Shown piece by piece: positions 13,944-14,341 of a DNA stretch of 64,000 nt. Positions within the stretch are counted from its first letter, which is position 1, and each line of letters opens with the position of its first letter. Below the pieces are notes generated by a model. The model made no database searches. It had not been told where the DNA came from and saw only the letters and a list, made by a program, of their open reading frames with translations. Position numbers and translations under genes: made by a program. Source of the stretch: Macrostomum lignano (lineage: Eukaryota); the NCBI GenBank assembly GCA_002269645.1, contig NIVC01000023.1, forward strand, positions 1,302,001-1,366,000. Reading direction: 5' to 3'.

Positions 13944-14341
13944 TCATAAAATGTATGCACCATCAACCAACTGATCATCTTTCCTCCCATTCAATCTCAC
14001 CCGAAGCGATTCGGCACCGCTGACCCTCCTCCTTGGCTGAAATCCGCGATCCATGTCTCTTAGCAGCCGCCTTCGCCGGCCTCCATCCGCAGCCGAGTTC
14101 ATGAGCAGCAGTTCAATCCCGCCAGCAGCGCCGGCAGCCGCTAATCCTGTCAGCAGGGCTAGGAAAGCGCCGCCAACGTGCTCAATGGACAGCTCGAGCA
14201 TTCCTTGGCTGCGATGACCGGAGCTGGCGCAGCTGAGGTCAGCCTTGGCCGGATGGAGGTAGGCCATTTTTAGCCTGACCAGCTGCTGTGACTGCTGCAT
14301 CAGCAGAATCTCCTCGGAGAGCAGGTCGGTGTAGGGGGAAC
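13944..14341 (-). CDS. Paralogous iGluR exon (end of S2, M4, C-tail): candidate alternative last exon of the glutamate receptor
   Basis: Phase-1 acceptor attgtag|GT TCC CCC TAC; reads GSPYTDLLSEEILLMQQSQ..LSC..LSIEHVGGAFLALLTGL..GIELLL..GAYIL*, alignable with exon 12 ([42 protein letters not shown]). Confidence 0.75.

What the first reader, a model, noticed from the sequence alone, without database searches (positions are those of the whole stretch)
13944..14341. Duplicated S2-M4-tail exon: a possible flip/flop-like alternative 3' end for a kainate-type receptor
Seen in sequence: 1.4 kb beyond the iGluR stop lies a second exon starting G|SPY behind a phase-1 acceptor, exactly like exon 12, so the exon 11 donor (19074) could splice to either. 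It keeps the S2 disulfide Cys and an M4, replaces QKWW with KMAYL, has an Ala/Gly-rich M4, and ends GAYIL instead of STQL. Only tandem repeat and AT-rich sequence lie between it and the main gene, so there is no room for a separate upstream gene. Established: vertebrate AMPA flip/flop exons swap the equivalent pre-M4 stretch and alter desensitisation. Inference: an independently evolved cassette that would switch the LBD C-lobe, M4 and PDZ ligand together.
Basis: partly seen in the sequence, partly recalled or inferred. Interest (0 to 1): 0.8.

Follow-up and report, generated by a model that had tools for sequence, protein, structure and literature searches.

The report
Spare S2–M4 exon behind flatworm iGluR
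A flatworm (Macrostomum lignano-type) kainate-type glutamate receptor gene has a second, old but well-kept copy of the exon for the end of the ligand-binding domain and the last membrane helix, 1.4 kb past its stop codon; it could make an alternative receptor tail, but no transcript data could be checked.

Summary
On the minus strand, 14341-13944 is an open 132-codon segment behind a TAG|G phase-1 acceptor. It is homologous to exon 12 (17211-16946) of the kainate-type iGluR gene, whose stop codon ends at 15711. It is the only extra iGluR piece in the 64 kb. Only a 3'UTR-like stretch and minisatellites lie between it and the gene.

It is not a decayed copy. There is no nucleotide similarity and only 32% amino-acid identity to exon 12. 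Yet it keeps every family-invariant residue of the segment, the G and E of the M4 core-facing motif, and host-like codon usage. In a neutral-decay simulation, 0 of 400 runs reached its profile score and 96% acquired stop codons.

Points against: the 51-codon tail shows no coding signal and holds an in-frame GTGAGA donor-like site. The acceptor is TAG where the ten mapped acceptors of the gene are CAG. The conserved kainate C-tail motif is missing. No protein in about 15 billion contains the segment. Five orthologous loci in other animals lack it.

Use as an alternative last exon from the exon 11 donor is the best reading (about 0.45). A recently orphaned exon of a lost tandem paralogue is nearly as likely. 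"Flip/flop-like" fits only by position.

The parts
13944..14341 (-). Candidate exon: phase-1 start (G|GT), 131 full codons plus TGA (13946-13944). It encodes the S2 C-terminal helices, the linker, M4 and a 51-residue tail.
   Evidence: sequence and translation; BLASTP vs exon 12, E=5e-13; family HMM, E=4.9e-9
14342..14343 (-). AG of the acceptor (aattgtAG|G). The pyrimidine tract is modest. A second in-frame acceptor-like ctgtAG|CC lies 39 nt upstream, in the last minisatellite unit.
   Evidence: compared with the gene's other acceptors (all ten CAG)
14100..14339 (-). The well-conserved coding part (S2 end to the end of M4). Cys38 is at 14231-14229 and M4 is at about 14177-14100. GC3 0.72 / GC2 0.42; codon-usage log-odds +24.7 bits over 80 codons in frame.
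13947..14099 (-). Post-M4 tail (NSAADGGRRRR...GAYIL). No coding signature: -8.0 bits over 33 codons, then -4.8 over 18. AF2 pLDDT is about 28 for residues 441-471.
13999..14000 (-). GT of an in-frame, phase-0 donor-like site CGG|GTGAGATTG. It matches the gene's prevailing GTGAG donor and, over 10 nt, the exon 11 donor context.
13870..13875 (-). ATTAAA hexamer about 70 nt after the candidate's stop codon; a possible poly(A) signal.
14363..15229 (.). Minisatellite arrays (25-nt unit x 17.8; 87/150/237-nt units) filling most of the gap between the main 3'UTR and the candidate exon. Similar arrays fill introns 11 and 12.
15711..16061 (-). Terminal exon of the main gene ([19 protein letters not shown]...VPSTQL*). 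It carries the bilaterian kainate-receptor membrane-proximal CTD motif.
16946..17211 (-). Exon 12 of the main gene: (G)SPYVDVF...QKWW...M4...FKHIKHS. Phase-1 acceptor, phase-0 donor TCA|GTAAGC.
19074..19299 (-). Exon 11 of the main gene, ending ...GYGIGMPA(G) with donor CAG|GTGAGATT at 19074|19073 (phase 1). This is the donor that could serve either exon 12 or the candidate.
15711..33800 (-). Mapped body of the kainate-type iGluR gene. Exons are identical or near-identical to UniProt Macrostomum lignano models A0A1I8.... Further ATD-like sequence near 36.3-36.7 kb was read by eye only and has no Pfam hit.

Best explanation
The segment is a genuine, selectively maintained paralogue of exon 12 of a Macrostomum kainate-type iGluR gene. 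It lies 1.37 kb 3' of the gene's stop codon on the same strand.

Most likely it serves as an alternative last exon. Transcripts that read through the proximal 3' end would splice the exon 11 donor (19074) to the acceptor at 14341, skipping exons 12 and 13.

The product would have the same ATD, S1, M1-M3 and most of S2. It would differ in three places: the last two LBD helices (WW replaced by YL), an Ala/Gly-rich M4 that keeps the core-facing G and E, and a short basic C-tail that lacks the conserved kainate CTD motif.

Shown: homology, phase compatibility, purifying selection on the S2-M4 part, and absence of any other partner exons.
Inferred: that the splice occurs, where the isoform ends (stop at 13944, or splicing on from 14001), and any effect on gating, assembly or trafficking.
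For: - Same strand, same phase-1 G|SPY boundary as exon 12, and a canonical AG. The boundary is conserved in Schistosoma, Taenia, Paragonimus, Biomphalaria and Branchiostoma orthologues.
- It is the only extra iGluR-like segment in 64 kb, so it cannot belong to a separate gene here.
- The divergence is old: no nucleotide similarity to exon 12 and 32% aa identity. Even so, the frame is open for 132 codons.
- Every column of the S2-M4 part that is invariant in a 30-sequence alignment is kept: S, L, Q, C, L, GG, F, G, E.
- Identity to exon 12 is enriched at family-conserved columns, 17/42 against 8/41, p=0.03.
- A neutral-decay simulation from exon 12 to the same identity gave stop codons in 96% of runs. 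Its profile scores were -3.8 +/- 4.9 bits (maximum 14.2), against 31.9 bits observed; 0 of 400 runs reached that.
- Codon usage and GC3/GC2 match real exons of the gene.
- The M4 'VVLGAVE' core-facing positions (PMC10558804) read V-A-L-G-A-A-E.
- An AF2 model of the chimera places the two S2 helices at pLDDT 76-87 and an M4 helix at about 71-74. This is weak evidence, because the alignment guides the model.
- No closer relative exists among 1.84 billion representative proteins. A recent copy from another annotated Macrostomum iGluR is therefore unsupported.
- The implied 4.7-kb intron is within the gene's range of 0.1-7.2 kb. ATTAAA follows the stop.
Against: - No transcript evidence was obtainable.
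- No protein in the roughly 15-billion collection, including the UniProt M. lignano models of this gene, contains the segment.
- The acceptor is TAG, while all ten mapped acceptors of the gene are CAG.
- The minisatellite runs to 21 nt from the acceptor.
- The exon lies beyond the gene's own terminal exon and 3'UTR.
- The nearly invariant WW is lost, and so is the conserved SLCxxMxEE CTD motif.
- The tail shows no coding signature and contains a strong donor-like site with no detectable downstream partner.
- M4 hydrophobicity is lower (KD 1.71 against 2.25).
- It is absent from five orthologous loci within 10 kb downstream.
Confidence: 0.45

Rival explanations
1. It is an orphan exon: the last surviving piece of a divergent tandem iGluR paralogue, or of an old partial duplication, whose upstream exons were removed by a recent deletion. 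It is no longer part of any productive mRNA and will decay. Any splicing to it would be noise.
For: - iGluR genes do sit next to each other: a second iGluR flanks the Biomphalaria orthologue.
- M. lignano is a repeat-rich neopolyploid with ongoing chromosome-level karyotype changes (abstracts of PMC10468722, PMC12869490, PMC10733133).
- The tail has no coding signature. It carries a good phase-0 donor but no partner exon, as expected if a downstream tail exon was lost.
- The flanks are satellites and a possible retroelement remnant.
- The acceptor is TAG.
- No annotated isoform contains it.
- The selection signature only shows past function.
Against: - It needs a narrow time window. By my own estimate, about 400 nt of unconstrained DNA should acquire a stop or frameshift after roughly 1-2% divergence, yet the frame, the acceptor AG and all invariant residues are intact.
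- If the paralogue had died recently, intact homeologous copies would be expected in this neopolyploid. No protein with a related C-terminus exists in the searched collections.
- One deletion that leaves an in-phase exon behind an intact gene would itself create an alternative 3' exon, so this origin does not exclude use.
Confidence: 0.35
2. The segment is expressed, but not as a simple terminal exon of this gene. One version: it is an internal exon (14341-14001) that splices on from the GTGAGA donor to an exon outside the detectable set. Another version: it is the start of its own short transcript, for example SL-trans-spliced at the acceptor, a mechanism known in M. lignano. Translation from Met15 would then give a roughly 118-aa single-pass M4-like membrane protein.
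For: - The in-frame donor-like CGG|GTGAGATTG gives the same 1-to-0 phase class as exon 12.
- The coding signal stops after M4.
- SL trans-splicing is widespread in M. lignano (PMC8629364, PMC5730564).
- In-frame ATGs lie at codons 15 and 26.
Against: - No CTD-like or other iGluR-like partner exon lies downstream in the window.
- No promoter or SL evidence was found.
- A free-standing M4 peptide has no precedent that I know of.
- Conservation of the S2 helices and of the disulfide Cys makes sense only when the segment is joined to the rest of the LBD.
Confidence: 0.1
3. It is an assembly artefact: a terminal exon of another iGluR locus was joined here through collapsed minisatellite or satellite repeats.
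For: The exon is bracketed by long tandem repeats (14363-15229 and 13412-13835), in a genome known to be hard to assemble (PMC10733133 abstract).
Against: - Strand and order are exactly those needed for splicing.
- No source gene with such a C-terminus exists among the searched proteins.
- Nothing in the window marks a junction (no N runs).
Confidence: 0.05

Closest known systems
AMPA-receptor flip/flop exons (GRIA1-4 exons 14/15)
   Same: Two homologous exon versions encode the end of the S2 segment, which forms LBD dimer-interface helices and the pre-M4 linker. One upstream donor chooses between them. (PMC8257547.)
   Different: - Flip and flop are adjacent 115-nt cassettes that differ in 8-10 of 38 residues and rejoin a common M4 exon.
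- Here the copies share 32% identity. The second copy also carries M4 and a tail, lies beyond the terminal exon and 3'UTR, and cannot rejoin common sequence.
- Usage is unproven.
Alternative C-terminal splice forms of kainate and AMPA subunits (my own knowledge: GluK1-2a/b/c, GluK2a/b, GluA2/GluA4 long and short)
   Same: Alternative 3' exons or splice sites give different cytoplasmic tails, and so different trafficking and PDZ interactions. PMC8257547 states that most iGluR splice events affect the CTD.
   Different: All of those diverge after M4. This candidate would also replace M4 and the last LBD helices. I found no described iGluR isoform that swaps M4 (literature searches). That is absence in the searched library, not proof.
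Young partial exon duplicates, as in the Branchiostoma lanceolatum kainate-2-like gene (L006 20588-21286)
   Same: Extra copies of the G|SP... exon start lie in tandem near the parent exon.
   Different: The amphioxus copies are near-identical to the parent, include intron flank, and are truncated, the usual look of recent non-functional duplication. The Macrostomum segment is complete, has no nucleotide similarity to its parent, and is conserved at functional positions.

Membership tests
iGluR S2-end / M4 segment (C-terminal part of Pfam Lig_chan PF00060) | Significant match to a family profile over the S2-end-to-M4 interval | tested here: met
   A custom profile of 60 kainate-type proteins matches at positions 656-737, 32 bits, E=4.9e-9. 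BLASTP vs exon 12 gives E=5e-13. Pfam hmmscan on the fragment alone gives no hit. The genuine exon 12 fragment also fails Pfam's cut-off there (12.9 against 30.8 bits), so that test is uninformative for fragments.
iGluR S2-end / M4 segment (C-terminal part of Pfam Lig_chan PF00060) | Conserved S2 cysteine, which pairs with the Cys in ...RNC... of the preceding exon (pairing from my own knowledge) | tested here: met
   Cys38 (14231-14229) falls in the invariant Cys column of the 30-sequence alignment. The disulfide itself was not tested.
iGluR S2-end / M4 segment (C-terminal part of Pfam Lig_chan PF00060) | Hydrophobic M4 helix with GGxF at its start and the core-facing G and E of the VVLGAVE motif | tested here: met
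   VGGAFLALLTGLAAAGAAGGIELLL: best 19-residue KD mean 1.71. GG, F, G and E fall in invariant columns. The motif is taken from PMC10558804. AF2 models a helix over 386-439.
iGluR S2-end / M4 segment (C-terminal part of Pfam Lig_chan PF00060) | KWW motif at the end of the last LBD helix | tested here: not met
   WW is present in at least 90% of the 30 aligned sequences. The candidate has Y-L there (KMAYL).
Flip/flop-type mutually exclusive cassette | Two adjacent homologous exons with matching phases on both sides that rejoin a common downstream exon | tested here: not met
   The exons are separated by exon 13, the stop codon, the 3'UTR and minisatellites. No common downstream exon exists.
Flip/flop-type mutually exclusive cassette | Both versions present in mRNA | not testable with these tools
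   No M. lignano transcript data were reachable. The protein collections hold no product containing the segment.
Alternative last exon of the kainate-type gene | Shared upstream donor and own acceptor in a compatible phase | tested here: met
   Donor 19074|19073 is phase 1; acceptor 14342|14341 is phase 1. The acceptor is TAG rather than the gene's usual CAG.
Alternative last exon of the kainate-type gene | Own stop codon and poly(A) signal | tested here: inconclusive
   TGA lies at 13946-13944 and ATTAAA at 13875. The tail has no coding signature and contains a donor-like site.
Alternative last exon of the kainate-type gene | Junction-spanning transcripts | not testable with these tools
   See the decisive next steps.
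Decayed pseudo-exon or gene fragment | Disabling mutations, or a neutral substitution pattern | tested here: not met
   For the S2-M4 part there is no stop or frameshift. The profile score lies far above the neutral simulation (0 of 400). Codon usage is exon-like. For the tail the pattern is compatible with neutrality.

The most novel reading that the evidence does not exclude
A functional alternative last exon that exchanges, in one step, the last two helices of the ligand-binding domain, the M4 transmembrane helix and the cytoplasmic tail of a kainate-type receptor. As far as my searches show, this would be the first iGluR isoform pair differing in M4, the helix that governs tetramer assembly. 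It would have evolved independently of vertebrate flip/flop.
Probability: 0.4. Interest if true: 0.7.

Novelty: new variant of a known kind. Interest (0 to 1): 0.5.

Why it matters
M4 packs against the M1-M3 core of the neighbouring subunit and is required for tetramerisation (PMC10558804). The helices just before it form the LBD dimer interface that sets desensitisation, the region swapped by flip/flop (PMC8257547).

An isoform switch that replaces both, and also drops the conserved kainate CTD motif, could change assembly partners, gating and trafficking from a single gene. It would show that invertebrates reached flip/flop-like diversification by another route, through an alternative last exon. 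It would also give a natural M4 chimera for structure-function work.

If the exon is instead orphaned, it is a clean example of how one deletion in a tandem array can create a ready-made alternative 3' exon.

Tried and rejected
- **Word-indexed protein search with the exon alone:** no hit at E<=0.01.
- **Exhaustive phmmer against 1.84 billion representatives:** two spurious repeat proteins and one ordinary iGluR fragment, P0123, from an AT-rich Logan genomic contig. This is not an orthologue of the candidate.
- **Pfam on the fragment:** nothing. It is uninformative, because genuine exon 12 also fails the cut-off.
- **Looking up the M. lignano model P0003 to reach homeologous loci:** not on record, so no homeologue comparison or dN/dS was possible.
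- **blastn of the exon and flanks against the window:** only minisatellite self-hits. A recent DNA-level duplication is rejected.
- **Search for a second CTD-motif exon ('exon 13 prime') or any other iGluR exon in 64 kb:** none. A separate or nested second gene within the window is rejected.
- **Retrocopy origin:** rejected. Homology stops exactly at the intron/exon boundary and an AG precedes it.
- **Ancient neutrally drifting pseudo-exon:** rejected by simulation.
- **Orthologous loci** of S. mansoni, T. solium, P. westermani, B. glabrata and B. lanceolatum: no divergent second S2-M4 exon.
- **Isoform pairs in the hit list** (Photinus, Nerophis): they differ elsewhere.
- **Literature searches** for M4-swapping iGluR isoforms or Macrostomum iGluR work: nothing relevant.
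- **AF2 of the chimera:** only moderate quality (mean pLDDT 65.8) and guided by the alignment, so it is treated as weak evidence.

Full report
**What is there**

The window is flatworm DNA. The iGluR exons on the minus strand are identical or nearly identical to UniProt Macrostomum lignano models (A0A1I8...). The next-best hits are schistosome, cestode, insect and vertebrate kainate receptors at 45-60% identity.

Splice mapping gives a gene running from at least 33.8 kb down to a TGA at 15713-15711. Its donors are mostly GTGAG and all ten mapped acceptors are CAG. Its introns are stuffed with minisatellites.

The 3' end of the gene is:
- exon 11 (19299-19074), ending ...GYGIGMPA(G) with a phase-1 donor;
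- exon 12 (17211-16946), reading (G)SPYVDVF...QKWW...M4...FKHIKHS, with a phase-0 donor;
- a terminal exon (16061-15711), reading [19 protein letters not shown]...VPSTQL*. It carries the membrane-proximal CTD motif shared with insect kainate receptors and, from my own knowledge, with vertebrate ones.

**The candidate**

At 14341, behind aattgtag, a phase-1 reading frame starts (G)SPYTDLL and stays open for 132 codons to TGA at 13946-13944.

The homology is beyond chance. BLASTP against exon 12 gives E=5e-13. A profile of 60 family members gives E=4.9e-9 over exactly the interval covered by exon 12.

Nothing else in the 64 kb resembles an iGluR exon, on either strand, including 27 kb upstream of the gene. 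There is no second copy of the CTD motif. The 1369 nt between the stop codon and the candidate are an AT-rich 3'UTR-like stretch plus minisatellite arrays at 14363-15229.

Downstream lie a (TC)n-rich satellite, ORFs on the other strand with YIDD and GIY-YIG-like motifs (no Pfam hit), and then a carboxylesterase-family gene at 6078-4478.

**Is it a dead copy?**

There is no nucleotide similarity to exon 12 or to anything else in the window, and amino-acid identity is only 32%. The split is therefore old. Several results show that the S2-to-M4 part did not drift neutrally.

- All columns of this part that are invariant in a 30-sequence alignment are kept: S, L, Q, the disulfide Cys, L, GG, F, G, E.
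- Identity to exon 12 is concentrated at family-conserved columns, 17/42 against 8/41, p=0.03.
- The M4 positions that face the channel core in AMPA receptors, the VVLGAVE motif (PMC10558804), read V-A-L-G-A-A-E. Exon 12 reads I-A-L-G-S-C-E. The Ala/Gly enrichment falls on the other faces of the helix.
- WW is replaced by Y-L, so it remains hydrophobic.
- GC3/GC2 is 0.72/0.42.
- A codon-usage log-odds score trained on the host gene gives +24.7 bits over 80 codons in frame and -32/-38 out of frame. This matches real exons scored leave-one-out.
- I simulated neutral substitution from exon 12 down to 32% identity. Stop codons appeared in 96% of runs. Profile scores were -3.8 +/- 4.9 bits (maximum 14.2), against 31.9 observed. 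None of 400 runs reached the observed score.

The segment therefore evolved under purifying selection as an iGluR S2-M4 module for most of its history. An old pseudo-exon is excluded. A retrocopy is also excluded, because homology ends exactly at the intron boundary.

**What weakens the 'isoform' reading**

- The 51 codons after M4 have no coding signature: -8.0 bits over 33 codons and -4.8 over 18, with GC3 about equal to GC2.
- AF2 models residues 441-471 of that tail as disordered, with pLDDT about 28.
- The tail contains an in-frame CGG|GTGAGATTG at 14001|14000. This fits the gene's dominant donor type and gives the segment the same 1-to-0 phase class as exon 12. GAYIL* may therefore be read-through into what was once an intron, which undercuts the PDZ-ligand idea.
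- The acceptor is TAG, and the minisatellite reaches to 21 nt from it.
- The conserved CTD motif would be lost.
- No protein in the word-indexed 5.8-billion-cluster collection or among the 1.84 billion representatives contains or resembles the segment. The only true hit is an unrelated iGluR fragment at 39% identity, from an AT-rich genomic contig.
- The annotated M. lignano models stop at exon 12 or use the STQL exon.
- M. lignano loci could not be retrieved, so homeologues and dN/dS could not be examined. No RNA data are reachable with these tools.

**Comparative context**

The G|SP(Y/I) exon boundary is conserved in S. mansoni, T. solium, P. westermani, B. glabrata and B. lanceolatum. None of these has a divergent second S2-M4 exon within the gene or within 10 kb downstream.

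Within a panel of the retrieved proteins, the candidate scores best against flatworm kainate-type sequences (52-49 bits for Trichobilharzia and Schistosoma, 45 for its own gene) and worse against the rest (panel median 30). This fits an origin inside the flatworm kainate-type lineage followed by fast change.

The amphioxus gene holds three near-identical, truncated copies of the exon start. That is what young non-functional partial duplicates look like, and it is unlike the Macrostomum segment.

**Interpretation**

The combination seen here is old divergence, intact frame, an intact acceptor AG, selection-type conservation, correct strand and phase, and no partner exons. Present or very recent function explains this best.

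The only way the S2 helices and the disulfide Cys can function is when joined to the rest of the LBD. In this locus that means splicing from the exon 11 donor. I therefore rank the alternative-last-exon model first (0.45).

The main rival (0.35) is that the exon is what remains of a tandem paralogue whose upstream exons were deleted recently. This fits the donor-like site without a partner, the featureless tail, and the unstable, repeat-rich neopolyploid genome. Against it, the rival needs a narrow time window, and no related C-terminus is found in any searched protein set.

The two models overlap, because such a deletion would itself create an in-phase alternative 3' exon.

Minor rivals are an internal exon or independent, possibly SL-trans-spliced, transcript (0.1) and misassembly through the flanking repeats (0.05).

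**Comparison with the known**

By position, the segment covers the flip/flop-equivalent stretch: the end of S2, the LBD dimer interface and the pre-M4 linker (PMC8257547). By architecture it is not a flip/flop cassette. The exons are not adjacent, they do not rejoin common sequence, and they are far more divergent than flip and flop.

It is closer to the alternative 3' exons that give kainate and AMPA subunits different tails, except that those all diverge after M4. I found no report of an iGluR isoform pair differing in M4.

If the exon is used, it is a new variant of a known kind (an alternative last exon in an iGluR gene), and interesting for receptor assembly and gating. If it is not used, it is a well-preserved orphan exon.

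**Verdict**

Interest 0.5. The junction-read test and the cross-Macrostomum comparison are simple and decisive.

Noticed in passing
window 14001|14000 vs 19074|19073 (minus strand): The donor-like site inside the candidate's tail (CGG|GTGAGATTGA-ATGGG) matches the exon 11 donor context (CAG|GTGAGATTGAGAATGGGG) over 10 consecutive intron bases and beyond. This could be a shared donor consensus or a trace of common origin; it is unexplained.
   Followed up: partly
window 14363-15229, 16304-16812, 17607-19061, 24100-29600: Introns and the 3' flank of the iGluR gene are filled with long minisatellite arrays of 16-, 20-, 25-nt and longer units. One intron carries about 5.5 kb of such repeats. The 25-nt unit next to the candidate exon contains CTGTAG and GTGAC, so each unit resembles a branch point plus an acceptor. 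The last unit offers an in-frame acceptor 39 nt upstream of the candidate's.
   Followed up: partly
window 11400-12800 (+ strand), flanked by (TC)n-rich satellites at 11428-11705 and 13412-13835: ORFs with an RT-like ...RYIDDIF... motif and a GIY-YIG-like ...VYVGET...R..H... motif, read by eye as a possible Penelope-like retroelement remnant. Pfam gave no hit, so this is unverified.
   Followed up: partly
window 4478-6078 (minus strand): A carboxylesterase/cholinesterase-family gene (PF00135, E=2e-39 and 1e-25) with a signal-peptide-like start. It is the next gene downstream of the iGluR locus.
   Followed up: partly
L006 20588-21286 (Branchiostoma lanceolatum kainate-2-like gene): Near-identical, truncated tandem copies of the end of the exon-11 equivalent and of the start of the G|SPIRDKITIAILQLQEAGQ exon, with intron flank included. 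These are either recent partial duplications or an assembly artefact.
   Followed up: partly
proteins P0016, P0020, P0045 (Drosophila 'kainate 2' isoforms X5/X8/X7) and other insect models: The S1-to-M1 part of the query aligns two or three times to overlapping stretches of these models. This suggests tandemly duplicated, possibly mutually exclusive, exons or mis-joined gene models in insect kainate-type genes.
   Followed up: no
proteins P0001-P0004 (UniProt M. lignano): The public models of this gene are incomplete or mis-joined. M1 is missing or garbled in P0001/P0002. P0001/P0002 end at exon 12. P0004 (77% paralogue) ends exactly at the exon 11 boundary. P0003 reads through the exon 12 donor (…KHSVSVG…). 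P0001 and P0002 also differ from each other within shared exons (for example CAGIEF against CAGVEF in M4). The locus deserves re-annotation.
   Followed up: partly
L005 60757-61371 (Biomphalaria glabrata): A second iGluR gene lies tail-to-tail about 9 kb from the kainate-2 orthologue, so iGluR genes do neighbour each other in at least one lophotrochozoan.
   Followed up: no
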